DNA from: Ascidiella aspersa
Taxonomy: Eukaryota
Length of the DNA stretch: 64,000 nt
Assembly: GCA_963924565.1 (NCBI GenBank)
Contig: OZ004613.1
Coordinates: forward strand, 23,188,001 to 23,252,000
Reading direction: 5' to 3'
A program made the position numbers and the translations under genes. The notes beneath the pieces were generated by a model. The model did not search any database and was not told the DNA's origin. It saw nothing but the letters and a program-made list of their open reading frames with translations. Shown here one piece after another: positions 1 through 56,691 of the stretch; the first letter of the stretch is position 1, and each line of letters starts with the position of its first letter.

Positions 1-3000
1 TTGGTTTTTGGCCCACTTGATTCCTCGAATCACCACCGAATCTTATGGGACGCCGACCGTATGAAAAGGCGTGCTAAACCCCGAGTCCTTTCGTAACCGC
101 GGCAATCCTTTTTTGCTTCTATACTGTTTGGGTAACTTTCCATTGTGGATCGCCGATGTTTTCTTACATAAGCCGCATTCGGTTGTATCGTCTTTTCGCC
201 CGAAACTCTTCTTTTGCGATACGTCAACGGCTGGGTACGCACGCCCCGAGTATAATAGCCACTGTTACAGCGCGATCAAAGTTTTCTATGTTTTTTTAAC
301 TTCCCAGCCTGCCAGCTCTGTAGTCTCTCGAGCCGATATTGTGCGCGAATTATCTTCAATCGTTAAGTCTAGCGCTGTAAGGGCTTCTGACGATAATTTT
401 CGCCCTCAAGAATTGACAATCTTCGTATTGCCCAGGTCGCCAACAGACGCCCCCACCCCCCGGTGTAAGAGGGGTTGGAAAGGGTAAAAAATGTAACGCC
501 GAGCCTCGGGTGTCGGATTAGGGCGCCGCGTTGAGGTCACGACCGCGCCGTGCTGAAAAAGCCGAAAATGTTTGTAAATATGCGAAGGGAGAGATGTAAC
601 TCGGCAGCAAACCTTTGCCTTACTCCGAAGTTTATAACTTTGCCCGATAACGCGATCGAAATGCAAGCGCTCGTTGTGGCAAGCTGTCAGCAGGTAAAGC
701 GAACACTCCTGCACTGTTATGTATTCGTAAAAGTTTCGATGAGAATTTGGGAAAATTAAACTGGACTGGAGCTACTTAGATTAGTAAATGTTTATTTAAA
801 CCGTATCGCGCTATAAGGCACTTTAGGACAACATGACGCTGATACCGTTTGTAGACATTGCCTTTGAGGCTTACGTTTGATGTATAGTTATAAATGAGCT
901 GACGTCAGACGGTAGCACGCGGTCTTACTGCCGCAACCGCGTAATTTACACAAGGCACGCCATCATACCGGAGTTAAACCCTTTGTAAGTCTGGTACTAC
1001 CAGTACGCTAAGTTGTGCTGCAACCATGTGTAGTGTAGGGCAATTGGAGGCAACGCAAACTCCTTTTAATTGCATCAACCTGCCTATAAATACTTGAGAC
1101 AAATCTGCACAGTTGCCACCTAAAATTATAATCGAGCGGGCGTCTGCGAGCAGTGATGACTGACGGTTTCTCGGCAAGCCAAATGCTGTCAGATTCGGAG
1201 TTGCGGCGCGATCACTTTGCCTTCTTACTTCAGCCTGTCTACCAAAGCGACTGGTACATCACTAGGCTCTTTACGCCAAGTCGTGTAGATCCAAGACAAA
1301 TCTGACAAAGCTCCGTTTTCTTGCTGCGTTGCGTATTGCAGCGTGCGTCGCATATTTGCCTGTCGCCGTCGCTTGTGTGCTTGGCCGTCAGGCGTGGGAA
1401 ACACGCCAACTAATTAGCGCCTTTGGCTTAGCTCTCCTCCGCAAAGAAATCGCATAGTTTCACGCGGCGGCTTTTTTGCGACGTCACGCGAGTTCAAACG
1501 AGCGGCGATCCTTGATTAATGAGCCGCCGTGCAGCGTGTTGTACTTCGGCAACTAACGCCGAGCGGCTAAGCCGGTTTGGATTACAGTAGTTATAGGCGT
1601 TTAGGTTTCTACCTAAAGGTCGCCAGCTGCTTTCGGGCCCGCCACGACCGGTTATAAACATATGATCAGATTCTGGAAAACGTACATGTTGAATCACCAA
1701 TAATTAATGGACTCCAAATACAGCAAGGATGTAAAATATCCTCCCTATTGCCAAGTACCACAGCCTGATCTTTTTAATGTAGCCTTACAACTTTTTTTCA
1801 TGTCTACTGATTTAAAATGCGCCCGAATCTTGTAAAAAAACAATTTATCAAAATTTGTTTTATGTAAGGCCGTTTTAGTCCATAAAACCGCGATGTGCTT
1901 CAAACCCTTAATAGCTAGTTTGGAAAATCATTCAAAGTCACTCATTAAGAAAGTACAAGCTGGGGCATTTTTATGTTCTCACTTGACCCAGTCGCAGTCG
2001 GGGTGGTGTTGGGTAACGCCAAGTTCCGCAACCTAAAAGCAGCAAACAGGACACAGGGAGCTTAGAGCAAGCTCCCGACTGTAGAATATCAACATTCCTC
2101 TTTCGCGACTCGCCAAATAGACTTAAATGCCATATATGGCCGTTGCTGTTTTAAGTTTCAACCTGTAGGTTGTTCAACTTTAAATGACGTTTTCGCACGA
2201 ACTAAAGTTATTCAATTCAAAATTAGGAGCATCACCTCATCGTGGCTAGCACAACAGAACATTGAGCTTCGAAAAGTGGGGGATCTAATTTATTTGTATT
2301 TGTAACTGCTGCATTGAGCGACATTAATATTAAACACCAGTGATTTAAATAATGAAATATAAGTTGCAAATAGTCTTTTAATAAAGTTGATGACTAGTGT
2401 TTTGTTTTGTTTAATCCAAACTTCCTTTACCCCAACGCCACACCTATTTTACTCGCGAATCACGGAATGGGACTTAGTTGGCTAAACTCAAAATACGATG
2501 CCTAAAAACGGGCAAAATCTATCATCCTAGAAAAAGCATTTAACGAGGAAAAAAATGGTCGTAGTCGCGTCATCGAACCGTTGCTGTCCCAAAATAATAC
2601 TTTTTGGATTACTTTTGCACCGCAAATAGGTTTTGGGTCGACGTTTAATTTGCTACAGTCGAGCGCCCAAGCGCCAGTCATCATCGGCAACGGCTCTTAA
2701 GTGTCGCCGAGAGCCAGTCTTGTACCGTCATTAACCCCGGATTCGGTTGACCGGATTTCGCCGCGTCTCGAAACTGTTCCTCGCCGCAGTATTTTCGGAG
2801 TTCAAGTCGCGGCCGCGTTTGGGCGCAAACATTTAGCGAGTTCGGCTGTGGTTGAGTTGTCAGCGACGGCAATGGCTGTTGAATCTCACTTTCGCTTAGA
2901 CGCAGCGGGTTCCCATCGAAGCACGAAACCGCCATGGCTCAAGCGCGGGGTGAAAAATGCAACGCGGTGTATAACATTTACGTGCAATCAGCCAGTCGAC

Positions 3001-5923
3001 TTAGCTGCTGAAAAAGCAACCGCGGCGAAATGTGTAAACCTTTCCTGATTTTATCTGGCAGCGACACGGCGACTTTATCCGGCAACAAAACGCTACTAAG
3101 GAAATCCAGTGTCGGTTTGATTGACGCTTTTAAGTGCCCTAAGCTGCGCCCCGGTATTGCAGTACAGCTTTGTTGTTACAAGGGAGTAAGATTAGTCGTT
3201 GCGGTTTCGTTTTTTGGCTCTTAGGTCAGTCAATTCTCCTCAAAGCTACACTCACCCGTCCATGGACGCCGATTAATTAACCTAAAATCTGTTTGATCTG
3301 TGCCTCTCTATCTGCGCGCGTTTTGGAATGTCCAAAAAATGGCGAAAATCATCGGGCATTCATAAGTCATAACCTTGCCAGGCACGTAAGGCAAACACGA
3401 CAACTGCATTGTGCGACCGGGCCGGACAAAAGATCACAGGCGGGACGATTGAAAAGCATGCTCCCATAGCTCAAGACGCCGCGCGGGGGAATACACACTA
3501 GCCGATTTATGCCGACGACGGCGTCGCGAGGTGCACCTTTCTCCAACCACTGCGACCCATTTGTCAGCTGGGTGGGTTATTTTTTACGCGCGCATTCTGT
3601 CACAAAGAGACGCGATTTAGACGCCGCCCAAGCGCAAACAGCCCAAATGTAGGATGTCGTAAATTTGCGGTTCATGAAACGGGCTGATATCAAAAGCGAT
3701 TTTTCACAGCGAAACTGACATTTTTGCCAGGCGCGCCCAGAGCAACACAAACCTTCTGTTGTCAGTTTATTTTAAGTTTGAGTGCACCCCGAACCGAGTC
3801 GACCTACGCTTACAAGGGCCCCTAGGGTTTGAAGCGGTTTTATTTTAATCCAACTGCATTCCGCGTATTTCAAACGGATAGCCAGCGATGAAACCAGCCG
3901 GTTTTGCTGTGGCGCCATTGACGAGCAGGATGCCTTATTTATTTTACTTCGATTCTGCCTACAAACACTCGACGGTCATTGTACTTTCCCGTCACAATAT
4001 GCATTACAACTCAAGTTCTCGTTGAAAGGCAATCTGCACCGATAAGCTCTCTGTAGATTTTTAAGGGTCCAATATGGAAGCTTCTAGGCTCCGCAACCGA
4101 ACCTAACCTAAAGCATGTAGCAGACCGGGATTAAAATGATCAAGTTTCGTGATTGCGGTTCAAACCGCTTCAGTGGCGCAACGGATCAGCAGCACTTGAG
4201 AAGAAACAACAACACCAAAGTTTTTGAGGAGTGGTGTGTAGATGGCGATGGACCAACAATATAGACCATGGCTTCATGTTTCGTCGCGTTGTTAAACAAC
4301 ATTCCAGCTGGTGACCCCAAGGGGTCCGAATCGTTTAAGCCAACAGCCCCGGCCCCATCCCAGGCTTTAAAAGCCGCAAAGTACAATAGTAAAGCATTTG
4401 TTTCGTGTCACCGATGTGCAAGTTGACAGGCCGATGACAACAACTCTTTGTGGTAAAATAAAACGCGCTTACCGAGTTAGCTAGGCAGCAGCGCTCAGTG
4501 CACTTAAGTGCACCTTGCGGACACATGAAATAACGGTCGATTAGTTTGAGACCTGAACACACCTGCACGTTGTTGTGCATGACCGTTAGAGGCGAAAAGG
4601 CAGTGCTACTTTGGCAAAATAAGTTTTGTAGTCGATTTCGACGAAGTTGATCTTCTCTAGACAAGTTTCCTTGAAGCACACAGTGGAGAAAAGGCCACGA
4701 GTTAAACACAATTGACGCTAAATATACTCCACCATGTTCTTTGTGTTTAGCGAATGCCGCTTTCACATTGACGCGTAACAGGTGCCGTTCCGGTTCCTTG
4801 TCGGCAAACTCCTGTTCGAGACGCAACAAACAGAGAGCTTAGCGGTTTGCGGTCAAACAGCCAGGCCGAGTCGGGAAAACGGCACGAACCCAATATTAGG
4901 GAAGGCAAAACGCCGAGCTTGGCAACTCAAGCACGTAACAAACGCCAGTGGTTTCTTTGTAACAAGTCTGAGGAGCCTCAACGTTTGTCATCCGATACAC
5001 GGAATGTCCCCGTATAGTAGCCAAACGAAGAGCATAACAATGTACGGACCGCCGCCTCTGCAAAGATAGCCATAGGGGCCTGGGAAGACAACATGAATTC
5101 CTTTTTGAGGGGACACGGTCGGTCCTGTGTGTTTCTTGCGCGCACAAGAACAAAGGCAGCGAGTTACTCGACCGTTGAACGCGCGCGGAACGCCCCGATG
5201 ATGTGTACTCTTTATTAGAGACTCAGCGGGACCTTTCTGCTGCTATGACCGCGTGACCCTCACAGCAACCGAAGCGTCACCAGCATACAAAAATAGGGAA
5301 AACTAAAAGAAATGTTAAATAGCTTTCTAAGATGGCACCTTCGAGACTTCGAAAGCAGCAGTTGCAAGCAAAAGCAAACTACACACCTTTCGCTTTGTGT
5401 GGGGAATATTGCTTTTTTATCCACTCATGCCTTGGGAACACAAGTAGGCCTACAATGCCACAGGTTGCGGTTTTACGTTTAGCAAGTAGCCTACTGTACT
5501 CTATCTTCATTAGCCACACAACGTACCTATCCAAACACGTGTCTTGTTGTGAGAAGGTACTGCTGTGCTTGCTGTGCATACGTAAGTTTACGCTGTTTGG
5601 GTTTATACGCAGTCAAAGCGCATTTAGATTCTCAAACATGTGTAAACTATGAACCCGATGCACCTATGTTATACTAATTTTCACGTATGACTTTGTGCGA
5701 CCCGATTGCGGACCCTGATTCAAAGATATGGCTGAAACGTGTCGTGCAAGGCAAATAAATAGGCTAACCTTGTTTTGCACAGGTTGCCGGTCTACTTGTA
5801 TATCAGGGTGCTGCGACTTGTTGGGCTAAATAATGTGGTGTTTAAGCCTTGTAACGGCACCTGTTCACTCTCAAAGCTTGCTTTGTTTTCTTCGAGGAGA
5901 AGCATGGATCGGTTACTTCGATG

Positions 5924-6380
5924 CAGTGTTGTAATCATTTAAGTCAATGGCTTAAGTGCTCCTACGTCACTGTTTTTAAATGACCTGACTTGAACTTAAG
6001 TCATTTAGTAGAATAACTTTGGTTGAAATGTGGTATTTTCATTATAAAAATTATTTTAAACTGTGGTAACTTGGTGGAAGTAAGACCATTAGCTTGCTTT
6101 ATGTTGAATTTTTGTCATTTTAGTTACAATATTGCTCATAATTTGAAGTTATTGCTCACAATCGGGAATAATTGCTCGTAAATCGTGAGTTATTGCCCAT
6201 AAATGAGTTTCACATTTTAATAGTTTGACGTTTTATTTTTATATGAATGACTTGACTTGGACTGGTCTGGCAAGCTGATGGCTGCGACATGACTTGTTAT
6301 GTTTTAAAAAGACTTGACTTAGACTGAAGGTATTTTACCCATGACTTGATTGGTAGATTTATCATTTGAAAATGACTAGA
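5924..6380. mobile_element. Degenerate hAT-type MITE, family A (CAGTGTTGTAA end, GACTT arrays)
   Basis: One terminus plus internal similarity to 20285-20770; the other end is eroded. Confidence 0.6.
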
Positions 6381-9076
6381 TAATAAAATTTAAATACATT
6401 CAATTGGAAAAAGTATAAAGAACAACATAAAAGTTACTCGCAACAATAGAGAAAAGTAAATGTGCGTGACAAGCCCTAAAAGCTTCGAAGTTCGCTTTTC
6501 GATTAGCCTTAGTTAAATCGATTGGTTTCGGCTTCGATTCGTTAACTAAAGCATTGGTTTCTCATCGGCGGTTGTAAAGTAAGAGACTGGCGTTTATCTG
6601 CAAATAGAAGAATCGCTGTGGTTGGCGTTTTTATTGATTCACATCACTCAAAACTAGATCGAAAACGAGATGCGGCATCCCGGGCTCGTTTAAGTTACTC
6701 GCGGTAGCTTTCGGCTTCACAACTGAAACCCACTGCTAACTGGTTCCGAGCAATTGGCCCTGGTTTGTGTGCATTCACCTTCCAAGTAAAGCGAGCCTTA
6801 CGATAACCGTTCCTCGCCGCGCAGACCGCACATATCCCGTATACAGCACGCGTTTTTGGTGTTTTTCCATTAGCGAACGTCAACCTTACTGCTCATCGCC
6901 AATCTTGTGAGAAGAGAAAGCGCCCGCAACCCAAACCGCCTATATGGAAACGTGTTTATCTTTTACGGCGACTTTTCTTCTCATTTTGCTGCATGACGAA
7001 AGAGGAATTTTTGGAGAAACTTTGATACATATCACTGCTTTAAATAACGCGAAGGTTGCCGCAAGTTTGGGCCTGACGATCGCGATTGGATATAAATTTT
7101 AATTCAATCCTTGCCAACTTAATTATTGTTAAATGAAGCAGTTTTAATTTACTATGTAATACAAACCTGTTGCAAGCTTAATAAATTGAATTGCATCCGC
7201 AAACATATCATGTGACTTTATATCTATTAAGGAAATAGTTTGCGGGCAGGTAGAATTGACTACAAGGGTCGAATTTGGCCTCAGTTTGGTGACCCTTGGT
7301 CTACTTCAGGGAGATCTGGTCTTTTTAATTTAACAAACAGTAAATAGAGAAAATGTAACAGGGCTAAATCAATGGATCCATTGTTTGACGATTTGTCCAA
7401 ATTTTCCTCCCAACTTTCGACGATGATGCGTTTATTTGGAACGTGCACACAGTCGAAAAACCACACGATCGACGTCCGATTAATTACCACGAACACGAGT
7501 AATCCCGTCTGACCTTAGACGCGAAATGCTGCAACGCAAATTCTTTGCAGTAAACGGTGGCTTGTTTTGATTTAGGAGCTAATTTGTTGGAATCGGCAGT
7601 TGTGTATATTGGACCCGCTTGTGGGGAGTGTAGCCGACTAAAATTCATCCGGCCAGAGATTCGGGAGTCGGTTGCGTTTAATTTAATTTCTCTTTAAATC
7701 TTTCGGGCCCGGCACCACTTATCGAATCGTGGCTGCCGTTCAAATATATTCAGCGACCGTAAATAAATGCTCATATTGGCAGCAATTGCTGTTCATTATG
7801 CGTATACTTCACAAGAAATCATCTACGCACACCATTCCAAAAGTCTTGTACTTGATTGGCGAGTTTGGCGCATTTACGAAGAGCATCGAAAAGTTACGTT
7901 TACAAACACGTTTTTCCTGCTGCGCTGCAATTAACGTTAAGGATGTAAGCATCTTGGCCATGTTCTAAGAACGTACAGCGTCGTGATTGGCCGGTGTCAA
8001 GAACAACCTTCAAGGGTGTGTCACCGTTTTTATGTGACTCAACTCAAACTGCGAAGAAGCGAAACCTGCTCACGCAGGCTGAAGAAAAGGGGGAGTTGTT
8101 AAACACCGACACCATTTCGTGACATAAGCGAACAAAGAGGAGAAAAGACCTTTTTTATATTTTTTGAGATAAATTTTATACGTCCTCGTCTGTTGTGTGG
8201 TATTGGATTGAATTTAACTAAAACACTTTTTAATATATAGTGGAAAACTTCCAATCATGCGGAGAACATCCTGTAAATGTATATAGATAATTAAAAGACC
8301 TTTACCTACTCCATAAAAAGGTGTGTCCTTATATAATCCTAAACCATTGCAGCAGGTTTCCGCTTGAATCGGCAGTTTTTTCGCATTATAAAGCTATATT
8401 CCAGCTATTATTACGACGAACAGATGAAACGAAGTACTCCTTTAGAAATATGCAAGTTACAAAGGGCCATTTTGTCACAATGTAAGAGGAGTGAAGAATG
8501 GCCAACAAGTGAACGGAGTGTTATATTGACCCTACCCCCGCCCACGATTTCGCATAAAATGGATGTTTCGCAAGACCGCAGAAACCAAAGGGCACAAAAT
8601 GAAAGGCCAATATTGAAACAGTAGCGGTGGCTGTTGTTTGGTGGTCTTTATCTGCCAGGAACCATGCACAACTCACGCGACGGAGTGAATCACTGATAAA
8701 AGCGACTGCTAAGTGCATTTTTATTGACCGATGAATCGACGGTCTGCGCCGCTCCAGGCCGTCCAGAAATTGACCTGACGCCTTTAAGTGTTTTCCGGGG
8801 TAGATTTCAGGTCTTTGTTTGGTGAGGGCAAGGGGCACGGCAATTGGCATCACAAGGTTAGGCCATAAACAAGTAAAATGCCTGCTGATTATGAGCAAAC
8901 TCAAGACCACCTACGTATTTACAACGTTTGTCAAGCTCAAAGAGCAATTATCATTTACGTTTAGTTGGTGAAACTAACATGCCAAGTTATCGCTCTTTTC
9001 CAACAAAGGAAAAAATCACTGAATGCAATTGTGTTTGCATTTTTATAGTTAAATTGACCACAAATATAGCTTAAGG

Positions 9077-9406
9077 CAGTGGACCTTTGTGGTTGTGACT
9101 TGTGGCACCATATAGAAATTATTAGCGGCACCCTATAGAAATATTTTTTTTCTCGTATTTTGGCCAAGTTGTTAATTGTAACGTTGCAATAAACGAAATT
9201 GAAACAGCACATTGACTGTGCAACAAGATGGAAAAAAAAACTTTTTAATATTTGGCACTTTTATCTTACACAAAACAATTGTATCAATAAGCTTACCAAT
9301 AAAGCAAATTAAATGAAATCTTAATTAATTTCAAATATCTCTCAACACCCTGGAGCGTTACAAATGAAACCCTATAGCGACGCGACACCCCGGTTGAGAA
9401 CCACTG
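9077..9406. mobile_element. hAT-type MITE (CAGTGG...GGTTGAGAACCACTG)
   Basis: Terminal motif; flanks gcttaagg/gcttacgt (6/8); shares gcggcaccc with copies at 39599 and 48507. Confidence 0.55.
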
Positions 9407-12400
9407 GCTTACGTGGACATGACCTGTGACCTCCCTATTACATCCACCCTTGGTGTTTATTTGGTTTTCGTTATTTGGCGTGTGCAGTCTGTCGCTCGAT
9501 AAATGTTTTGCAGCACCCTTTGGTCAACACAGACTTGAGACTGGGCGCCCGGGTAAAATACGGCGTCTGGCCAGCGGTTAGCGGTTGGCCGGGGTCCGGT
9601 AATTTTCCCGCGGCGATTTTGGGTGAGAGCTTTTCGCGGAACAATGACGCCAAAGAACCCTGGTGGAAATTACCTGAGGGCATACAATTTGGGTCGATTG
9701 TTGGTTGTTTCGCGCTAATGAATTAGTTTTATGATCGGCAAGCATGATGAGCCTACACAATTACGGATAATTGTCAAGTTTAAGTGCAAATTAGATTTCG
9801 CATTAACGATACTTGCGAAATAAACGAAAGCAATCCAGTACCAACGAGTATAATTAACTTTAAAATGCCTAACGAGGACTTTTTGACCTTTGTAGCTTTT
9901 ATAACAAAGTTTTTAGGGTAAAAAAATCCACGGCATTTAATGAGGATTCTTTTTTTTCGTAAAACAACGTCGTATACTTCTTAGTTTTTGCCATTCGATT
10001 TGGTTGAGTCGCCGTCTGCTGTCGTTTACATGGTTAGATATGTTAAAAACGTTTCTAAACAAAATTTCGACAATATGTGAGAAAACTGCTGAAGACAAAA
10101 GAAGACAGGATCATATCAGTTTAATTCGAACTTGTATTGTTAATGTCGATATTGTGTTCGCTGACAAAAAATTCAACGAAGAAAATTGGGTCGCCAAAGC
10201 TTTATTGTTGTACGCTTTCGTATTTAATTCCCTGCGAGGAAACGCTGAGAATCATTGGTTTTGAAAAAAACTTTAACAGCCCGTGGTTTCTTAACATTGT
10301 ATGAAGAATCTTATACTGTTCAAAAAAAGTATGGCGTGACCCGCGGTTGATAAAAAATAATTTGTATTGTCTACTTCTCGAGTAATTTGTTTTCACAAAG
10401 TAAAATTTGTGATATTAGGGTTTGGTAAAATGCCTCCCCCCCCCCTTGTCTCATACCAAAAAACGCAAGCCGGGGACCACTGCGTAATTACGCCGGCGCC
10501 TGAGATAAAGCGCTGTCAACAGCCATATGATAAATGATTGACGCGTGCCGCGCACTGTACGCCTGTTTAAACCAGGCAATCTGTAGCTCTCCGTACCGCG
10601 CTTTAATCCCGTGTTTTCGGCCAGGTAAGCCCGATAGCCAACAACAGAGCTATCGTGTCTGACCGCGGACGGATTAAGAGGTTCATTGCCCTTGTTGTTT
10701 TTACGCGCCTTCGCCCCGGCCGCAGCGTCTTTGGTGTTCCTGCCGAGTTGCGTCCATGAAAAGGTTCGAAAGCGCCTACACCCGGGCACTTCAGGTTGTT
10801 GTTCTTGCCTCCTGGCTGAAGACGCGGACTCGCTTCGTTATAGCCGGTGCTGACGACAGCCCTGCAACTGTTGACGACTTGAAACTGACCGCTCTCCAGA
10901 CACGCGTTATACTGTTGCCGGAACAGTGGTGGGGAGGGGGGGGCGTCTAATCTCGTTTAAACGACAGACACAGCGGCCGGCAACGCAAGCACGTTGCACG
11001 CAAATAGCGGCAAACAACAGAAAAATATTTTCGTCTAAATGCCCGAAAAACAGATCGAGAGGGCGTCGCCGAATGCTTGTGTTTTTGAGGAATCCTTTTC
11101 CGAAGTGCAGGACTGACGTAAGAGGAACCTTGTCGATTTGTTGTGTCTCATGCACATAGCGGCTCCTAAAAAGTGGTAGGCTTACACGTCAAATACCCAC
11201 GATCAGGTTGCTTACCGTGGAAGGACGTCACGCATAAACCCTTAAAGTATCCTTAGGAATTTAGAAAACACTCTCTCTTATCGCGTTCAGCGCATTCTTC
11301 ATGGGCACAAATGCGTTGATTGTTTGCTGGAGTTGCCATAGCGCGTGTTTTTGTCTTCCTGTTTTTCACCTATGATCTATTTTCCAGGAACCTTCTTGTT
11401 TTTTTCGGCTTTGTGTGACAATTTGCTGACAAGGAAGCATACAGAAAACCGAGATTAACCTCGCGACCGAAGGGTTTAAATGTGCTTTTTGCTACAAATG
11501 ATTATATCACAGGGCGTCGCTGGATTAAATAGTAGCTACTATTTTGGCATGCTAAAAATAACTAAAAATAGCCATATTGACATTTGGCTGAAAAAAAAAT
11601 AGTAACTTTATTTAAATTCAACATAGCAATCGCAAAATAAAGTTGTAGCTAATAAAAAAACAAAAATAACGGTTACATTTTATCGAGTAGGAGAATCATT
11701 AACATGAAAATGAATAGACGAAACGAAAAAATATCGGTGATAAATGCACATTGCGTTTGCGAGATTTTTCGCGACGCAGCATTAAAGCTATTACTGAAAT
11801 GTTGACACGGCCTGCGGTTTTGGCAAACCTCCACTCGACACACAATAGCAGCACAGAAAATCGCAAACCTGATTAGGAAGTTTTGCCTAAAACATATTTT
11901 GACCATTAGCCTTGTTGTGTGACGTCTATTGGCTGCTGCGTCAGTAAATTTTCGAACAAAAAATCTATTCGATAGAGCGTGAATACTGACACCATGCACG
12001 TTGATGTAATAAATTCCGAAGGTGTTTATAAAACCTACAAGATTACAACGTTACACGTCTTAAAAAGGCATGAGAATGACTAAAGGCATTACCCAAACGG
12101 GAGCACGTGAACTTTCCGAATTTGTAATGTAATCATGACAAGGCGAATTTCGCGAAATAGCACATCAATGACGCCTTTTTTAAAACTTTATTTCGGTGAC
12201 AAAAAAAAAAAATACCTTTTTGATAAATTTGGCATACATTGCGACGCCATTGTGCAATACCTATAGAAAAACAAACGGCACTTACTGTTTTTAAAACGTT
12301 TCCAATTGCTACAAAAGTTATGCAGCGAAACCGCAATTTAAAATACGATTAAATGCCATTCAAAAAACTATAAGTTTTGCTGTTATTCTAATGTGGTCCA

Positions 12401-15400
12401 AGGAAATGCCCGTGCCCTCGTATAATACGCCTTGCTAATGCCACAATTATATAAAAGAAGCAAGATATATTCACATTTTTACCATCGTGTGCTGATCCTT
12501 GACGCACAAAAGCATTGACTTATAGTATAAGTCCTCTTCTCGTAGTCATGTTTAAGTTATTTTAAACCAGATTTAAACTTTCTAATGTTTTTTATGTGCC
12601 CATTAGTTCCTCAACCTAACTATCCTATATTTTTACATATACAGCAAACCTAGGTCGGGTTTGCCAATAACAAACAAAATACAATAAAGCATGAGTAACT
12701 AAAAAACGAGGCCATATATAGGTACACCGGAAGCATACTACTAATTAACTGTAGTGTATATGGCTTCACTTACGGCTCGTTTTGAAGAAGCCTCAGCCTC
12801 GTACATTGATTGATTTTTGTGGCAGGCAATAAGGATTAACGCCTGTCTGTCAGCGACCCACAGATTATTTGTTTGAACACCCGGCCCTTGAGCCAGCTTA
12901 GCCGTGTTTTTCCGTTTCCAAACCAATAGGAATTAAAGTCTTGGGTTGAGCCTCTGAGGGCCCTTATCCTGATGCCCTATGGCACTTCCTGGAAGCTTTT
13001 GGGATTGCTTTACCCTTGTTGATTGATGACGGCGATTTGCCTGTAGGCGCTAAATACCTTGCAAAAACAGCAATGTTAGTGTATTGGAAAATCGAACGTT
13101 CAGCAGCATCGCAAGCTATTTTGGGCGTTGAGTTTTGCAAATTTTTACTGACTGCGATAATTGGGTGGAGGATATGTACAGTTGTGTCAACTGATTGAGA
13201 GTGATTGTGAAGCTATACCCCCCGTAAAGTGCTGTTTTGCCACTAATAAACTGACTTTGCATCCTCTCCATACCTCCCACGGTTTAACACGAAGCAATTA
13301 CAAATGTTTTTTAACAAATTTGCGCTGCTGACTACTGAATTAAAGTGTGTTTTGCTATACTGTACCGCAAACCGTTAAACGTCACCCTTTTTTAAAACGA
13401 CACAAACATGACTGTACAACGGATGTTAACATATTCAAGGGACAAACACTTTTTCTTCTGACTTTTTTTCTTTCTGAATTTATATAGACTGGAAGGGGAA
13501 CGTTTAAAAATAGGATAGCCTTTAAAACGCAATTGAGTTTGAATTTGTCTTTATTATTTTACCACGGAATACAATATGTCTATAACAAAAAAGCATATAT
13601 TTGCTGTAAATTTAACATGGGAAGGTGACATTAACCAGTTTGATCGGCTTTGTGTGTGTTATGTGGTAACTTACAGAAGCACTTGTTACGATTGTCAGTT
13701 TACTAATGCAGTTTATGATTGTGTGAAATAATTTTATTTCATCGCGTCAAGGGATATGCAATCTCTTGACAAGGCAAACACCAGACTTCGTCGTCTACAG
13801 ACACCAACCAAATAAAGTTAATTCAAGTGATCGACGAAATGTCACAGCAGCAACAAGACAAAGGATGTGACGTTAAAATCGAGTTGCTGGGGTGCCGCAG
13901 ACAGCTTTATTGAGCTGTAAACTGTAAAGTTAATTGTGCATGCTGGTTAAGTTAGTCAAAAGTTTGTCTTTAACGGTGGTGGGTTAAACCGTGGACTTTC
14001 TACATATGACACTCTATACATTGTACAGTCTACAATCCAGTATATTTAACTAAAAATTCCGCGACAAACACAACGTTTTCTGTTAATTGCTTTTGCGTCC
14101 AATTGTGAAACTAATGATCGTTTGAGGAATTATGCTTAAAGTTTAAGTTTACAATTGTATATCAAAAAGTTATAAGAAGTAAATAAGTCTAGTAAAAGAG
14201 GCTATTCTTGTAAAAAGTGGGACGTTTACTTGTGAGTCCTAAAACGTGTGTGTGCGACCCACTGAATGTTTGCAAACTTAAGTCTGGGAGCTAAGGCAAA
14301 ACTACTTAATTTAATTCGAAAAGTTCAACCAAGTCTTAGCTAGAGTGTACTCTTTTATGTTATACGTGTTTAAAGTCGCCTATTGGCGCGAATGGCTGCC
14401 TAATACAGTGGCCTTTTGGCGAAGCGGCCATTGAAGATCCCCGGAGTTTTCCTGCGAACTCGCGCGACGTTCAACCCACAACCGCGGCCCATTGCGCATC
14501 ACAGTACAGTGCGCTGTAGATGAGCGTAGAAAGGGCGATGCTAACAAAGGAGCGGCTTCGCATTCCATAGTAATCCGTAATACATAACACACACACACAG
14601 ACGCAGACACGCGCGCGCCAACTGTAAGACTGGGGGGCGTTTCCACGCAGACCGTCGCCACCAAAGCGTACGTGATTGCCTGCTAAGGGGGTGTGCTGCG
14701 CCTCACGCCCCCCTGGCCAGGTACCAAAGGCGCCGCGACGTCGTCGCCGCGCGGATTCTCGGCACGGTCCCGCGGGCGCAAAAACTTGCGACTTTCGGCT
14801 GACGAAATCGTCCGTCAGCATCCTCGCTTGTGCACACATACCGTCCACATCAAATGCGGATTGGCGAGATCAAATGCGACCCATCGCACCTATTGAAACT
14901 ACTCAAGCTCAGGCTCCGGCCCTGGTTGTATATTCTGCTCTGCAAGTCCAAACTTTGCGGGCGCGCAAAGGCAACGCATCCAGTCAACAGAAAGCGACTT
15001 CTATGCAGATCTGCGCAGCGACGGCGATCGTTAAATATTCAATTAGGCAACGTCTAGACAGCGCCCAGACGACTGGGCGTTGAAATTTCAATTTCAAGTC
15101 GAGGGAGCACGTGGGGTTAGTCAAGTGCAATTAGAGAAACTTCATATTTTCGCTCACCAGGCTGAGTCGTCGTTATTAAAGGTGTTCGAGGGTCGGCAAC
15201 TGTCTCTTAACCTTCTCCAAAATCTCTCAAAATACACTTGAGCACCGTGCGTTTCAGCAATCTAGAATATATCTACTCTTTAATTATTTAATATGTGCCT
15301 TCAATTGAATTTTCAAAATGCGTTAGTCTAAAAAAATAAAACGTTCATGGAAACTTGTCGTACAGGAATTTATTTTTACTAAAGGAAATAAATTAGGCGA

Positions 15401-16918
15401 ACACAAACCTTTTAGTCTTTACATGCAAATACACCGTAAGAAGGTTATTCAACCTGATCGTCATAAGTGATAAAGCTCGCTAGCCGCTCCGTTGTATCGC
15501 ATCTGTAGATCACGGGAGACCATGCCTAACAATTGCCGATAAGTTGAGGCACCTGCAGCATTACTTACGCCGACCGCGTGCGCCTAAAATAGGAGAACGA
15601 ATTAAGGCGGTAACCTGACCCGCGTTTGTTTACTATGCGTTCTTGGTTTGGATTGAATAGAACCTAACATTAATTGCCACCGTTTTACGCTAAAGTGATC
15701 TGACCGGTTCGATATTTTAATTATATAATCGACTTAGTGTATTTTGGGTATAAATAGCTCTCTGTGTTGCTTTTAGAGTAGGAAAATGGATCGTCACTAG
15801 TTGTTACTCGATCGAGTCGAATTGTTGCACAAAAGAGTCAAATGATGTGAAAAAAAAGTAAAAAAAGTTAGGACCATCTGCTAATTTTACAATTTTCAAA
15901 AGACTATAGGCAGTTGGACAACATAGGTAGGAACTGTCGTTCAAATATAAATGTTGTTCATAACCCGGTTATTTGTAATAGCACCATAACGCCAATGACC
16001 CATTGGCAGTTGACCGGGAAATTAAACAGTAATCATTGCTCGTTCAAGCAACTGAGAAAAAATTAATTAAAACTTTTTTTTTAATTAAAACGTGAAAATA
16101 CACATACTTTACTGCCGCCTAAAACGCGTAGCAAAGTTAAAAAAATTGGAAAGTGATATTACCAGCGTAGGAAGGTACTGACGCAATTTACTATACTGAA
16201 AGTCCAAAAGCCGAGCAGAAACACCTCGAGTAAACCCCGCGGTGCGAATGGATTCCTAAAGTTCTTTTGTCCTGTTAACGCTTCCAACACGGAAGTGTGT
16301 TGCTAAGGGCCTTCTCTGCGCATACGTAAGAAACCCGGCAAAAAAATGTACAGTTTATCTCAGCAAAAGGAGCGCGGGCCAGCTTCGGGAAACCAATTGC
16401 GCAAGAAACGGTAACATTGTAACAAAATGTGAGTTTTGGGGGGCGGTTCAGGGGTATTGTTTTTAGTCCGACTTGTGTCACGAACCCCGCGGTTTCTCGG
16501 CGAAACGCTGACTCCTCGTTTCGCATTTCCCAAGCTTAGAAGCTTTTTGGTCCACGAGCTTGTACCAACAAGGCTGTATCCTTTTACCGCTTTGACGCAT
16601 CCCATAACTTAAACGAAGTGTTCTGCCGCTGTTCGATTTCTTTACGCAACGCCAACTGCACCCCCCCCTCAGCGCGTTATGACCACACAGCACCAAAAAC
16701 TGGCGGTTTTTAGGGTTGGCGTGTTTTTTCTAGCTATCCCACGGATTTTGTACACAACATGTAAAACGTTTAGAATGTTTTCGACCAAAGAGAACTTTTG
16801 TATCCTTTCTATGGCGAGTCGGTTTAAACGCTCACGACCCTGCGACCCAGACACCTGAAGTGTGCAAAGCTTGCTATCTTTCAAGTTGCCACAAGTTATA
16901 CCTGGCCAAATACCGACC

Positions 16919-18435
16919 ATGATTCTGTTGTCAAAACCAACTAGGTATCATCTGTCAATTTGACAGGGTTCGCTCTTGTGTCCACAATGTGCGAAGGCAC
17001 GGAGCCAGCTCGTTTGAGGCCCCTACATAATTTACCACAAAAGTTAGTCAAATTTTCAACTGTTTTGCTTTTGTTTATTGGTTACGAGTCGCTTGGGCTT
17101 TGGCGTCGATTGTGTAAATATAGGTTTACTTGGCAACCCATTTTGGCAGCTAAAACCAAAGCCTAACAGTGTTAATTGCTGGCAAAAACAGGCACAATTT
17201 AGATTTTTAGGGCCACATAAAAACAAAGATATTCCGAAAAATAAAGTGATTTTGACTGTATTGAAGGCACAAAGATTGCACAAGAAACTATCGAAATTAA
17301 AACCTTTCAAATGCAACTATATGGAAATAATTATCGAGTTTTTCAACAATACGGTAGCTCTTTGCTAATCTTGTCACAAGCCGGCTTCATTCCCGTGTTT
17401 TGTGACGTTACAGCAAACGTCATGCGGCCGAAACAGCCCTCCAGGACAAGATGTCGCGGACGAGAGCCCACCATCGGCGGAGGGCCGTGCTGGTGGACAT
17501 GTTAGACCTCGTCGACGCGTCGGGCGAAAGTTGTAAATGTCTACTTGAAAGAAAACCTCACAGGTGATTAAGCCCGATCGAGTTAAAAACTGTACGGTTT
17601 TCGTGTTTGGGCTTACTAAAAAATATTTCGAAGATTAGTTTTTATTTGAAATCATTGGATTCTGTCTCCGCAAATAATAGCATGAAAATATTTTTTTCGG
17701 TACGCAGCCATTACGCTGAATTAAAACCTGTACGGTTTTCGTGTTTGAGCTTACTAAAAATTGTTCAATAGATAACTCTTTTTAAAATATTTAAAATTAA
17801 AGGATTATTCTTGCGTATATAAAAGCATGAAAAGGTCTTAACGTTCAAAGTATCATTTAGAGACATATTTCGTTGTCTTACAACTTTACAAACGTTTCGA
17901 AGTCATTTGTTTTTCTATTTTTTTTATTTCTATGGTGTAATGTCTGGCTGGTTCAAAATGCGCCAAGTTCCAGCCTTAAACCTTCCAGTAGGCATTGGAT
18001 CAAAATCGCAGGTGCTGATTTATCCAAAAAAAAAACTTGCCTGTAAACTCCCATGTTACACCCATATATACCTCACGCTTATGTGTTTGTTACATGTGTA
18101 CTGAATCCAACCTAATTGCAGAGCGAAAAAGTTCATTTTAAAAGATCCTTTTTGTTTCTCGCAGCTGCCACAGCCGATGCCCGCTGGTAAGCCGCATGAG
18201 TTCGCTGCTGCAATTCTTCAACTCTTCGCCGGATCAGCAGGCAAAGAGCGGCGCGAGCTTGGCCTCGCTGTTGAACAACATGAATCACAAGGATCGCGCT
18301 GTGATGCGCGGCATCGTTATTCAGGAGCTGCGGCGTCTGCGCATGCGCATCGTGCTGCGCAGAAACAAGATCCTGCGCAACTGGCGCCGACGACACCACT
18401 CGGTGTTCGACAACAAGCAGCTCATTTCGTACTGA
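16919..18435 (+). CDS. Putative PTH/PTHrP-family peptide precursor; exons 16919-17042 (needs +1 T at ~16959), 17414-17563, 18165-18435; ~181 aa
   Basis: GT-AG exons with matching phase 2/2. KR is followed by HAAETALQDKMSRTRAHHRRRAVLVDMLDLV, sharing E4, L7, R19-R21, L24 and hydrophobic 27/28/31 with PTHrP(1-34) without gaps. The intron lies 1 nt before the KR codons, as I recall for PTH/PTHLH. Exons are GC-rich in an AT-rich background. Confidence 0.72.
17414..17563 (+). CDS. PTH-like precursor exon encoding KR, the mature 34-mer and the start of the Cys module
   Basis: acceptor gttacag|C AAA CGT CAT, open frame, donor AG|gtgatt. Confidence 0.8.
17583..17835. repeat. Two-copy tandem duplication (~137 bp) in an intron of the PTH-like gene
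   Basis: ctgtacggttttcgtgtttgRgcttactaaaaa and agcatgaaaa each occur twice. Confidence 0.8.
18165..18435 (+). CDS. PTH-like precursor terminal exon (CHSRCPLVSRMSSLL...LRNWRRRHHSVFDNKQLISY*)
   Basis: Strong acceptor tttttgtttctcgcag|, open frame to TGA, C/G-ending codon bias. Confidence 0.8.
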
Positions 18436-20284
18436 ACTCCGGCCTTAAGGCGACTGCGAGGGTGCTTTGACTGCCCAACATAAATCATCAGTCTCTTTTC
18501 GCACCTCACCGCTCTTTAGCCTTCTGTCTGCTGTCTGTACAAATTCGCTATTTCGTCGTCACGCCGTCGCGTTTTCGGTCTTCGCCGATTTGCAGGCCCC
18601 CAAAAGGCGCCGAAGAGGGATACTGGACCCGATGGGTTTACGGGGTTTGGCAAGTCGTCCTTATAGTAGTAACCTCGGTGCGTTGGTGGACGATTTATGT
18701 GCTGATTTTCTCACCAAAAGACTTACTTGGCAATTATTAAAGACGAAAACTTTTTTCAATACGTTTTGTTGACTGCTCTGTGTAGCATTTAAAATGCTTT
18801 TATCAAATTACAAACTAAGGCCGACGACAAATTCTATTAAAACTAGTTATTTTTTCGAATTAATCTGTATTATTACTGCACTTTAGTTTTGTTTTTTACA
18901 ATTTTACCAGAATTCAGTATTAATACTTTACAATGATATTGTGTTTACTTTTTCAACGTTCTTCAATATTAGAAATATTTATTACAAGCCTTAACTGCCA
19001 TCGTTACCCCTCATGGTCTTTAATAAGGTTAGAGTAAAAAATAGTAAAATTATGGTTTGCAACATATTTTTCGGACGTTTTATAATTGAAAAACTATTTC
19101 AACAAATAAATGACGCTTTGCTAAATTTTCCATTCTTAAAGCGTTAGGTATTGTGCTTTTGTCGCATTAGTGCATTACTTCTTCGGTTCCAATTACTGGA
19201 AAACAAGACCAGAAAAAAAAAATGCCCGTCAAAAAAACAACAACCCATGTTGGAAGGAGTCAGGAAAATCGACCACAAAAAGCATGACGTTCTTCGTATT
19301 AAACACAACCCGATTTAAGGATTTATATAGTTTTAATATTTTGGATCTAGAGTTTTAATATTTTGCGAAACTAGTTTGTGGCCGATTTGCTGCTTTTGTT
19401 TGTGTCTGTGTGACGCTCGCTGCGATAATGTGACGACCTCCATTGAAAACCGCGTTGTTGGCAGCTCTATAGAGCTCGCTACGCGTTTTAAGCAAATTGA
19501 AACACATCCGTTTGGAAACCTCAACCAATATTAGCACGAAATCGAAAAGTCATTTCATTGTCGTGTGCTTTTACGTCAAATTTCCGTTTAGGCAGAAACT
19601 GTACAAATATAAGAAATAACCGCCGCAGCACGTTCTATCGTATAATGCGACACGGTTATTTCACCGCTTACATTTTAGTTAAATATTGTTCCAAATATTG
19701 TTACGATATTTCTGGTTGAAAGTTCCAATGGCTTTGTTGTTTTTTTCATTTCTTCAATTTCAGTCGAGACGGGACTGAATATATTTCTTGTGTATATGGG
19801 GATAGGAGTCCCCGTTAATGAGATCTCCTCCTTGGCCGGACGAACCCTTTCCTTTTCCCCTTTAAAACATTTTCTTGCGCCCTCGTGCAGTGTTTATTTT
19901 TCTACGGCAGTGTAATACGTGTTAGTGTTGCAGATCTTGTTGTGTGCGGTTGTTGTGCCCCTTGTCAATAAATTGCAACAAAATACACCGATTCTGGTAT
20001 GTTTCTTATATAATTGGTTATTTAGAACCCAAGTTACAGGCTGTACACTGTACAGACTGTACTCACATGGGTGTAGATCAGTGTATTTTTTAAGGTGTTT
20101 TTGGGACCAAAACGGTCCCCCAAATTTCTCCAGCGGTTTCCCAAATTTCGGACTTGCAACTTTTTGGTATTTAAATGAAACACTTGCGGTCTCTCAAAAC
20201 TACTTAGCGGTCACCCAAACCAAATCTAAAAAAAACCCTTGGTGTAGTTGAGATAAAGCCTGTAGATATATGGGTTCTGTGAAA

Positions 20285-23205: not shown

Positions 23206-56691
<33,486 letters not shown>

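What the first reader, a model, noticed from the sequence alone, without database searches (positions are those of the whole stretch)
16919..18435. Hidden PTH/PTHrP-family prohormone gene in a probable invertebrate chordate
Seen: three GT-AG exons splice in phase to ...LHNLPQN-KR-HAAETALQDKMSRTRAHHRRRAVLVDMLDLVDAS-GESCKC...; the key exon (17414-17563) is not shown in this frame in the ORF track. Known: PTHrP(1-34) is [34 protein letters not shown] after a KR site. Ungapped, the two share E4, L7, K/R13, S/T14, R19-R20-R21, L24 and hydrophobic 27/28/31; R20, L24, L28 and V31 also match PTH. As I recall, PTH and PTHLH have a phase-2 intron one base before the KR codons, and the same arrangement is here (AA|gttagt...cag|C AAA CGT). 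Inference: a divergent ligand for a class B1 PTH-receptor-like GPCR in an animal without bone or parathyroid, with an unusual His1 (as in secretin/glucagon peptides) and extra C-terminal modules. PTH-like peptides have been proposed in non-vertebrate chordates, so the novelty is mainly this precursor architecture.
Basis: partly seen in the sequence, partly recalled or inferred. Interest (0 to 1): 0.9.

Follow-up and report, generated by a model that had tools for sequence, protein, structure and literature searches.

The report
Orphan sea-squirt secreted protein gene
The flagged stretch is part of a real, transcribed but apparently unannotated sea-squirt gene for a secreted, very basic helical protein made as a precursor; its resemblance to parathyroid hormone is no better than chance.

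Summary
A transcript-like contig from a public run (X3) joins 17563 to 18165 (GT..AG), and the reading frame ends at 18435. The same contig joins 17414 to an exon 20.8 kb upstream, outside the window (G000:C7:23184402-23184607, L001:1327-1532).

The phase-2 intron one base before the KR codons is confirmed. The corrected model is 208 aa. The part after the furin-type site is 137 aa, has net charge about +16, is predicted all-helical, and carries four cysteines (CxC-x8-CxxxC) and one N-glycosylation sequon.

The PTH/PTHrP assignment has no statistical support:
- Pfam and PDB searches found nothing at E<=10.
- The ungapped score against PTHrP(1-34) is 9, or -6 without the RRR run.
- A second 34-mer after a dibasic site, out of 248 in this window, scores as well.
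- The family's residue 8-10 motif is absent.

No homologue of exon 3 turned up among 1.84 billion protein representatives, and the gene is single-copy. I read it as a lineage-restricted secreted proprotein of unknown receptor or target. The scan's first readers have called at least three other places in this genome PTH-like.

The parts
1..17413 (+). 3' part of intron 1. The whole intron is about 20.8 kb. Exon 1 lies outside the window at G000:C7:23184402-23184607 (L001:1327-1532 for the coding part): start codon, signal peptide and propeptide ending ..SLESLRR, plus 2 nt.
   Evidence: The 30 letters upstream of 17412 in the X3 contig are absent from the window and occur once in the genome. L001 reads ..CGACGAAG|gtgagt; translation. 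Sparse + strand RNA reads of X4 lie in 13600-17342. Large ORFs inside the intron have no Pfam domain.
17414..17563 (+). Exon 2. It completes a Ser codon (AG|C), then KR (the end of the RRSKR furin-type site), then a predicted basic helix HAAETAL...VDAS and the first half of the cysteine cluster (CKC).
   Evidence: Acceptor ttacag, donor gtgatt. X3 contig piece 17412-17560 at depth about 103.
17564..18164 (+). Intron 2, 601 nt, GT..AG, phase 2.
   Evidence: Joint 17560->18162 (cut +3) in the X3 contig. X3 depth is 0 over 17737-18130, while DNA runs X1 and X2 cover it continuously. GC 0.33.
18165..18435 (+). Exon 3, coding part. It holds the second half of the cysteine cluster (CHSRC), the NSS glycosylation sequon, three to four predicted helices including a long Arg-rich amphipathic helix, and the stop codon at 18433-18435.
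   Evidence: AlphaFold2 single-sequence model is all-helical with mean pLDDT 76; the helix at exon-3 residues 41-76 scores about 96.
18436..19500 (+). 3' untranslated region, reaching at least the end of the stretch examined. It carries two structural polymorphisms relative to the reference.
   Evidence: X3 contigs at depth about 100-118 and X4 reads with first mate on '-' (so + strand RNA) run through 18436-19500. There are 33 extra letters at 18648/18649 in X2 and X3, and 19159-19231 is replaced by 9 letters in X1-X3.

Best explanation
This is a real three-exon, single-copy, transcribed gene of a sea squirt. It encodes a 208-aa secreted proprotein with no detectable relatives.

Shown:
- The exon 1 - exon 2 - exon 3 splicing.
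- The open frame and its strong coding-type codon bias.

Read from the sequence:
- An N-terminal signal peptide (hydrophobic core AALCCAIHILLSLAV, likely cut after VQS29).
- A 42-aa basic propeptide ending in the furin-type site R-R-S-K-R71.
- A 137-aa product of about 16 kDa, pI about 11.3 and net charge about +16, with one N-glycosylation sequon.
- Four cysteines in a CxC-x8-CxxxC cluster that spans the exon 2/3 junction.
- Predicted helices throughout.

Inferred mechanism: the protein enters the secretory pathway. A furin-type convertase removes the propeptide. The product folds as a small helical protein in which two disulfides staple the first long helix to the following ones. It then acts outside the cell. 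I think a lineage-restricted signalling ligand (cytokine- or hormone-like) with an unknown receptor is the most likely role. A cationic defence or matrix-binding protein is the next option. Its likeness to PTH/PTHrP is what any amphipathic basic helix placed after a dibasic site can give, so membership of that family is not shown.
For: - Transcript: the X3 contig joins L001:1532 to 17414 and 17563 to 18165. Exon depth is about 100 and intron depth about 0. X4 stranded reads indicate + strand RNA.
- Exon 1 located and read.
- Joined model made locally only: 627 nt, one terminal stop, Cys at 109/111/120/124, basic sites, hydrophobic N-terminus.
- GC3 0.70 against 0.33-0.43 in the flanks; pI, charge and sequon.
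- Helical model of exon 3.
- Single copy in the genome.
- No family: Pfam 0 hits at E<=10. Of 1.84e9 representatives only a compositional, repeat-inflated hit. Word-indexed search found nothing at E<=10. Atlas scores are at most 0.86. Foldseek and VIA gave only generic helices.
- The PTHrP likeness is at chance level.
Against: - No orthologue was found, so purifying selection and the conserved core are unknown.
- The kind of run X3 is not on record; it is taken as RNA from its depth pattern.
- Only the last 30 of the contig's 291 upstream letters were seen, so the 5' end of exon 1 and a possible further 5' exon are unverified.
- Signal-peptide and furin cleavage are read by eye, not by a dedicated predictor or by experiment.
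- The whole protein could not be folded or searched as one piece.
- Extreme basicity and Arg-rich helices fit a defence or polyanion-binding role as well as a ligand.
- An intron directly before KR is shared with PTH-family genes.
Confidence: 0.55

Rival explanations
1. A highly diverged PTH/PTHrP/TIP39-family ligand. After cleavage at KR, the free N-terminal helix (HAAETAL...) activates a PTHR-like class B1 receptor, and the rest is a C-terminal extension.
For: - Signal peptide, propeptide and RRSKR lie directly before residue 1.
- An intron lies immediately before the KR codons, as reported for pth genes (PMC4354418), and is confirmed here.
- E4, L7, R20, L24, L28 and V31 are in register.
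- PTH-like peptides and PTHR-like genes are reported in urochordates (PMC4354418, PMC5640766), and known invertebrate class B1 ligands are very divergent (PMC7251081).
Against: - No Pfam or PDB hit at E<=10.
- Score 9, or -6 without RRR; another random 34-mer in the same window scores as high.
- The residue 8-10 motif (PMC3009671) is absent, as are S/A1-V2-S3 and Q6.
- The hydrophobic face of the helix is followed by a disulfide cluster and more helices, which would probably bury it (inference).
- Another locus of this genome has already been read as the PTH-like gene (s1-790823, unchecked). First readers flagged further candidates, which suggests a high false-positive rate.
Confidence: 0.07
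2. A secreted cationic defence protein. The Arg-rich amphipathic helices bind and disrupt microbial membranes or bind polyanions.
For: - Net charge about +16 and pI 11.3 after the furin site.
- A long Arg-rich helix modelled with high confidence.
- Taxonomically restricted.
- High depth in X3.
- Earlier notes describe other cationic Cys-bearing secreted peptide families in this genome (s1-788693, unchecked).
Against: - Single copy, whereas defence-peptide genes are usually in families.
- At 137 aa it is long for such peptides.
- Hydrophobic moments of the mature helices are moderate (at most 0.49).
- No activity data.
Confidence: 0.2
3. A multi-peptide neuropeptide precursor, cut at several basic sites (RRSKR71, RRR90-92, RR175-176, RR184-185, RRR193-195) into short peptides such as HAAETALQDKMSRTRAHH.
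For: Many di- and tribasic sites, and a signal peptide plus a furin-type site.
Against: - The basic runs sit inside confidently predicted continuous helices.
- There are no Gly-basic amidation signals and no repeated peptide copies.
- The cysteine cluster implies a folded domain.
Confidence: 0.1

Closest known systems
PTH / PTHrP / PTH-L / TIP39 prohormones (Pfam PF01279)
   Same: Signal peptide, a short propeptide and a basic cleavage site before the mature N-terminus. An intron directly before the KR codons. A basic amphipathic helix, with E4, L7, R19-21, L24, L28 and V31 in register with PTHrP.
   Different: No significant sequence or profile similarity. The activation-domain motif is missing (residues 1-3, 6 and 8-10). 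The coding part after KR is split over two exons. It has a four-cysteine cluster and further helices. Receptor activity is unknown.
Preproendothelins / sarafotoxins and apamin-type CxC...CxxxC peptides (own knowledge of the motif; toxin context in PMC8859281)
   Same: A secreted precursor of about 210 aa with an R-S-K-R furin-type site, and a two-disulfide-type cysteine pattern CxC...CxxxC.
   Different: The spacing is x8, not the invariant x7. The Asp and Phe/Tyr of the endothelin signature are absent, as is the C-terminal Trp tail. The cluster lies 37 residues after the furin site and no cleavage site flanks it. The motif is split by an intron, so Pfam could not be run over it (joined step left out).
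Helical cytokines, e.g. interferon gamma
   Same: A secreted, basic, all-helical protein of about 140 aa with a basic C-terminal region. There is a weak local match of exon 3 residues 5-53 to the N-terminus of human IFN-gamma.
   Different: Per-domain E-values are 32-35; the whole-chain E of 0.0088 arises only because the hit chains hold two copies. The Pfam scan returned no family at E<=10. No other IFN-gamma chain was hit. The match is not collinear with the whole protein. I treat it as chance.

Membership tests
PTH/PTHrP/TIP39 family (PF01279 Parathyroid) | Significant similarity to the family profile or to a member | tested here: not met
hmmscan of exon 2 against Pfam found 0 families at E<=10. 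phmmer against all PDB chains found 0 at E<=10. PF01279 found nothing anywhere in the genome, though its control also stayed silent, so that search is uninformative.
PTH/PTHrP/TIP39 family (PF01279 Parathyroid) | Conserved N-terminal activation region, including the M-H-N / L-H-D / M-H-D motif at residues 8-10 (PMC3009671, PMC4354418) | tested here: not met
   Residues 1-10 read H-A-A-E-T-A-L-Q-D-K. Only E4 and L7 agree, and positions 8-10 are Q-D-K. TIP39 also lacks this motif (PMC4354418), so the failure is not absolute for the wider family.
PTH/PTHrP/TIP39 family (PF01279 Parathyroid) | Prepro-architecture: signal peptide, short propeptide, basic site directly before residue 1 | tested here: met
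   The corrected exon 1 gives a hydrophobic signal sequence and ..SLESLRR; with exon 2 this reads RRSKR|H. The feature is common to many secreted precursors and is not specific.
PTH/PTHrP/TIP39 family (PF01279 Parathyroid) | Intron immediately before the KR cleavage-site codons (PMC4354418) | tested here: met
   The transcript contig joins ..CGACGAAG to CAAACGT.. (AG|C AAA CGT, phase 2). The intron phase in vertebrate genes was not checked in a source.
PTH/PTHrP/TIP39 family (PF01279 Parathyroid) | Receptor-binding amphipathic helix 15-34 with R20, W/F23, L24, L/I28, V/I31 (own knowledge) | tested here: inconclusive
   R20, L24, L28 and V31 are present and position 23 is Val. The i/i+4/i+7 pattern is that of any amphipathic helix, and R20 sits in an RRR run.
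PTH/PTHrP/TIP39 family (PF01279 Parathyroid) | Conservation of these residues in orthologues | tested here: inconclusive
   No orthologue or paralogue was found with exon 3 or in the own genome. Other ascidian genomes cannot be searched with these tools.
PTH/PTHrP/TIP39 family (PF01279 Parathyroid) | Activation of a PTHR-type class B1 receptor | not testable with these tools
   Needs a cAMP assay. No complex prediction was sent, because the report does not claim binding and the receptor ectodomain would be a joined multi-exon model.
Endothelin/sarafotoxin family | C-x-C-x7-C-x3-C with conserved Asp and Phe/Tyr and a C-terminal Trp tail, directly after a furin site (own knowledge of the signature) | tested here: not met
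   Cys at 109, 111, 120 and 124 gives C-x-C-x8-C-x3-C. The sequence CKCLLERKPH|S|CHSRC lacks the signature residues. The cluster lies 37 residues after the furin site.
Interferon gamma (type II interferon) | Significant similarity over the six-helix subunit | tested here: not met
   Only two human single-chain constructs were hit. Per-domain i-Evalues are 32-35 and the sum is inflated by the duplicated domain. Pfam shows 0 families at E<=10.

The most novel reading that the evidence does not exclude
The free N-terminal helix released at RRSKR is a genuine, extremely diverged PTH/TIP39-type agonist of a sea-squirt class B1 receptor. It would be built into a new precursor architecture: the ligand helix is stapled by two disulfides to a basic helical domain.
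Probability: 0.07. Interest if true: 0.65.

Novelty: new member of a known kind. Interest (0 to 1): 0.3.

Why it matters
If the PTH reading were right, it would give a testable ligand for tunicate PTHR-like receptors and a new precursor design. The evidence does not support that reading.

What remains is an apparently unannotated, expressed, taxonomically restricted gene for a furin-processed secreted protein. Such orphan secreted proteins are candidates for lineage-specific hormones, cytokines or defence factors in the closest invertebrate relatives of vertebrates. They are also common, and this one has no functional lead yet.

The practical value is threefold:
- A corrected gene model, with the true first exon 20.8 kb upstream.
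- A caution that PTH-like calls made by eye in this genome need statistics.
- A note for annotators that the gene appears to be missing from public protein sets.

Tried and rejected
1. Rejected: stops in the ATG frame, no junction reads, and the transcript uses a distant exon.
2. Interferon-gamma lead from the PDB phmmer search. Rejected: per-domain E is 32-35, the hit is doubled by single-chain dimers, Pfam gives no support, and the match is not collinear.
3. P0001, the only hit among 1.84e9 representatives (E 1.2e-4). It is a 3813-aa Tudor-repeat protein. The match is a Ser/Leu-rich linker repeated five times, so it is compositional and was rejected.
4. Endothelin-like reading of RSKR plus CxC...CxxxC. 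Rejected on spacing and signature.
5. Secretin/glucagon-type reading of His1. No Pfam hit; by inspection D3, G4 and F6 are absent.
6. PF01279 against the whole genome. Nothing found, but the control was silent too, so it is uninformative.
7. ESM Atlas on exons 2 and 3. Best scores were 0.86 and 0.81, below the level that means anything.
8. Foldseek PDB (no match at E<=0.001) and VIA wide search (Z at most 5.4, generic long helices and coiled coils) on the exon-3 model.
9. The search for homologous proteins with exon 3 at E<=10. Nothing found. Its length filter (49-155 aa) would also hide full-length relatives.
10. Pfam on large ORFs inside intron 1. No nested gene recognised.
11. Mirabeau & Joly 2013, the source of the published tunicate PTH-like peptides, is not held in the library. 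No comparison with those peptides was possible.
12. Steps left out. The joined model was used only inside local scripts for counts. No complex prediction was sent.

Full report
**The observation**

Bases 17414-17563 translate, after one base that completes a split codon, to KRHAAETALQDKMSRTRAHHRRRAVLVDMLDLVDASGESCKCLLERKPH. Bases 18165-18435 continue in phase to a stop codon. Splice sites are canonical.

I laid four public runs of the same organism on window 13600-19500.
- Runs X1 and X2 cover the stretch evenly, like DNA.
- Run X3 has depth near 0-4 between genes and in introns, and about 70-118 on exon 2, exon 3 and everything downstream to 19500. I therefore read it as RNA-derived, although its kind is not on record.
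- One X3 contig (1149 nt, depth about 103) skips 17564-18164 exactly, with GT..AG. This confirms the exon 2/3 junction.
- X4, a stranded RNA-seq run read only to 6%, gives a few reads whose first mate lies on the minus strand. That fits a + strand RNA.

**The first exon is elsewhere**

- The frame from the ATG at 16919 runs into stops.
- The frame that gives LHNLPQ is open only from 16945, has its first ATG at 16987, and would give no signal peptide.
- No read joins 17042 to 17414.

The X3 contig instead carries 291 letters in front of 17412 that do not lie anywhere in 13600-19500. Their last 30 letters are absent from the window. They occur once in the genome, at G000:C7:23184576-23184605, 3.4 kb before the window's first base. 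There the sequence reads ...CGACGAAG|gtgagt.

An ATG at L001:1327, preceded by an in-frame TAG, opens a frame of 68 codons plus two bases. That frame reads MTSPNPAVQKAALCCAIHILLSLAVSVQSGRLPLL...SLESLRR. The two bases AG join C17414 to give Ser, followed by KR. So the phase-2 intron one base before the KR codons is real, but it is 20.8 kb long.

**The corrected model**

The joined model was built only inside a local script. It is 627 nt and 208 aa with a single terminal stop.
- GC at third codon positions is 0.70, against 0.33 in intron 2 and 0.38-0.43 in the flanks.
- It has a signal-peptide-like N-terminus and a 42-aa propeptide ending R-R-S-K-R71.
- The product after that site is 137 aa, with pI about 11.3 and net charge about +16.
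- It has one NSS sequon and four cysteines at 109, 111, 120 and 124 (CxC-x8-CxxxC). The cluster is split by intron 2.
- AlphaFold2 on exon 3 alone, without an alignment, gives an all-helical model: mean pLDDT 76, with a 36-residue Arg-rich helix at about 96.

**Is it PTH-like?**

Every test I could run says the likeness is not more than chance.
- Pfam finds no family, PF01279 included, in exon 2 or exon 3 even at E<=10.
- phmmer of exon 2 against all PDB chains finds nothing at E<=10.
Three identities are an RRR run in a protein with 27 arginines, and without those positions the score is -6.
- Against shuffles P is about 0.01. However, two of the 248 34-mers that follow a [KR]R site in the six frames of this same window score at least as high, ours included, and the maximum is 11.
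- The family's hallmark at residues 8-10 (M-H-N, L-H-D or M-H-D; PMC3009671) reads Q-D-K here. Residues 1-3 and 6 do not fit either.
- The 34-mer has no C-terminal boundary. It runs into the cysteine cluster and further helices.

Two things do agree with the family. One is the prepro architecture. The other is an intron directly before KR, which PMC4354418 reports for pth genes. Both are shared with many secreted precursors.

PTH-like peptides and PTHR-like receptors have been reported for urochordates (PMC4354418, PMC5640766). A true member would therefore not be unprecedented. I could not compare with the published tunicate peptides, because the source paper is not held.

Earlier notes of this scan (unchecked) already assign another locus of this genome to a PTH-like peptide (s1-790823). 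They also list two more first-reader PTH calls (s1-805309, s1-805289), which suggests that by-eye PTH calls are frequent here.

**Relatives**

- Exon 3 against 1.84 billion representatives gave one hit at E 1.2e-4. It is a 3813-aa Tudor-repeat protein whose Ser/Leu-rich linker, repeated five times, sums to that score. This is not homology.
- The word-indexed search gave nothing at E<=10.
- Exons 2 and 3 are single-copy in the 308.6-Mb genome.
- The Atlas, Foldseek and VIA searches gave nothing specific.
- A PDB hit to human interferon gamma (E 0.0088) dissolves on inspection. Each domain scores E 32-35, and the two hit chains are single-chain dimers.
- The CxC...CxxxC cluster with an RSKR site recalls preproendothelin, but the spacing and the signature residues do not fit.

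The protein's own sequence did not appear in either protein library. The gene therefore seems to be missing from public protein sets.

**Host**

A GH6-like open frame over Pfam's cut-off exists in the genome. Among animals that fits the tunicate cellulose-synthase gene (own knowledge). It agrees with earlier notes that call this a sea squirt.

**What I think it is**

It is a lineage-restricted secreted proprotein. The steps are signal peptide removal, furin-type cleavage at RRSKR, and release of a 16-kDa, strongly basic, helical protein with two disulfides that acts outside the cell.
- A signalling ligand of unknown receptor is my first choice. The gene is single-copy, has a long regulated-looking first intron, has a CRE palindrome upstream, and encodes a folded domain rather than repeated peptides.
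- A cationic defence or polyanion-binding protein comes second.
- A multi-peptide precursor comes third.
- A diverged PTH-type ligand remains possible at about 7%.

**Limits**

- Other ascidian genomes cannot be searched here.
- Cleavage sites are read by eye.

Noticed in passing
window 36887-37249 (-) and 46569-46922 (-): Open frames matching the carboxylesterase/cholinesterase family (PF00135, E 1e-16 and 1e-14). They are exons of a cholinesterase-type gene on the opposite strand, downstream of the gene studied.
   Followed up: partly
window 18648/18649 and 19159-19231: Structural polymorphisms in the 3'UTR. Contigs of X2 and X3 carry 33 extra letters at 18648/18649. X1, X2 and X3 replace 73 reference letters (19159-19231) with 9 others, so the reference haplotype differs from all three runs there.
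   Followed up: no
L001:900-1130 and L001:972-979 (G000:C7, about 3.9-4.1 kb before the window): A GC-rich stretch upstream of exon 1 holds a perfect CRE palindrome, TGACGTCA, about 260 nt before the apparent 5' end of the transcript contig. It may be a cAMP-responsive promoter.
   Followed up: no
L001:1316-1339: A short out-of-frame upstream ORF (ATG at 1316) overlaps the start codon at 1327.
   Followed up: no
window 14400-15100 and 13600-13796: A GC-rich block (up to about 65% GC locally) inside intron 1, with a few + strand RNA reads of X4 nearby. It could be pre-mRNA, an alternative promoter or an unannotated transcript. Its ORFs have no Pfam domain.
   Followed up: partly
L004 = G000:C5:19612351-19615590 (match at C5:19613851-19614090): A glycoside hydrolase family 6-like open frame (28.1 bits, over Pfam's cut-off). 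In an animal genome this fits the tunicate cellulose-synthase gene.
   Followed up: no
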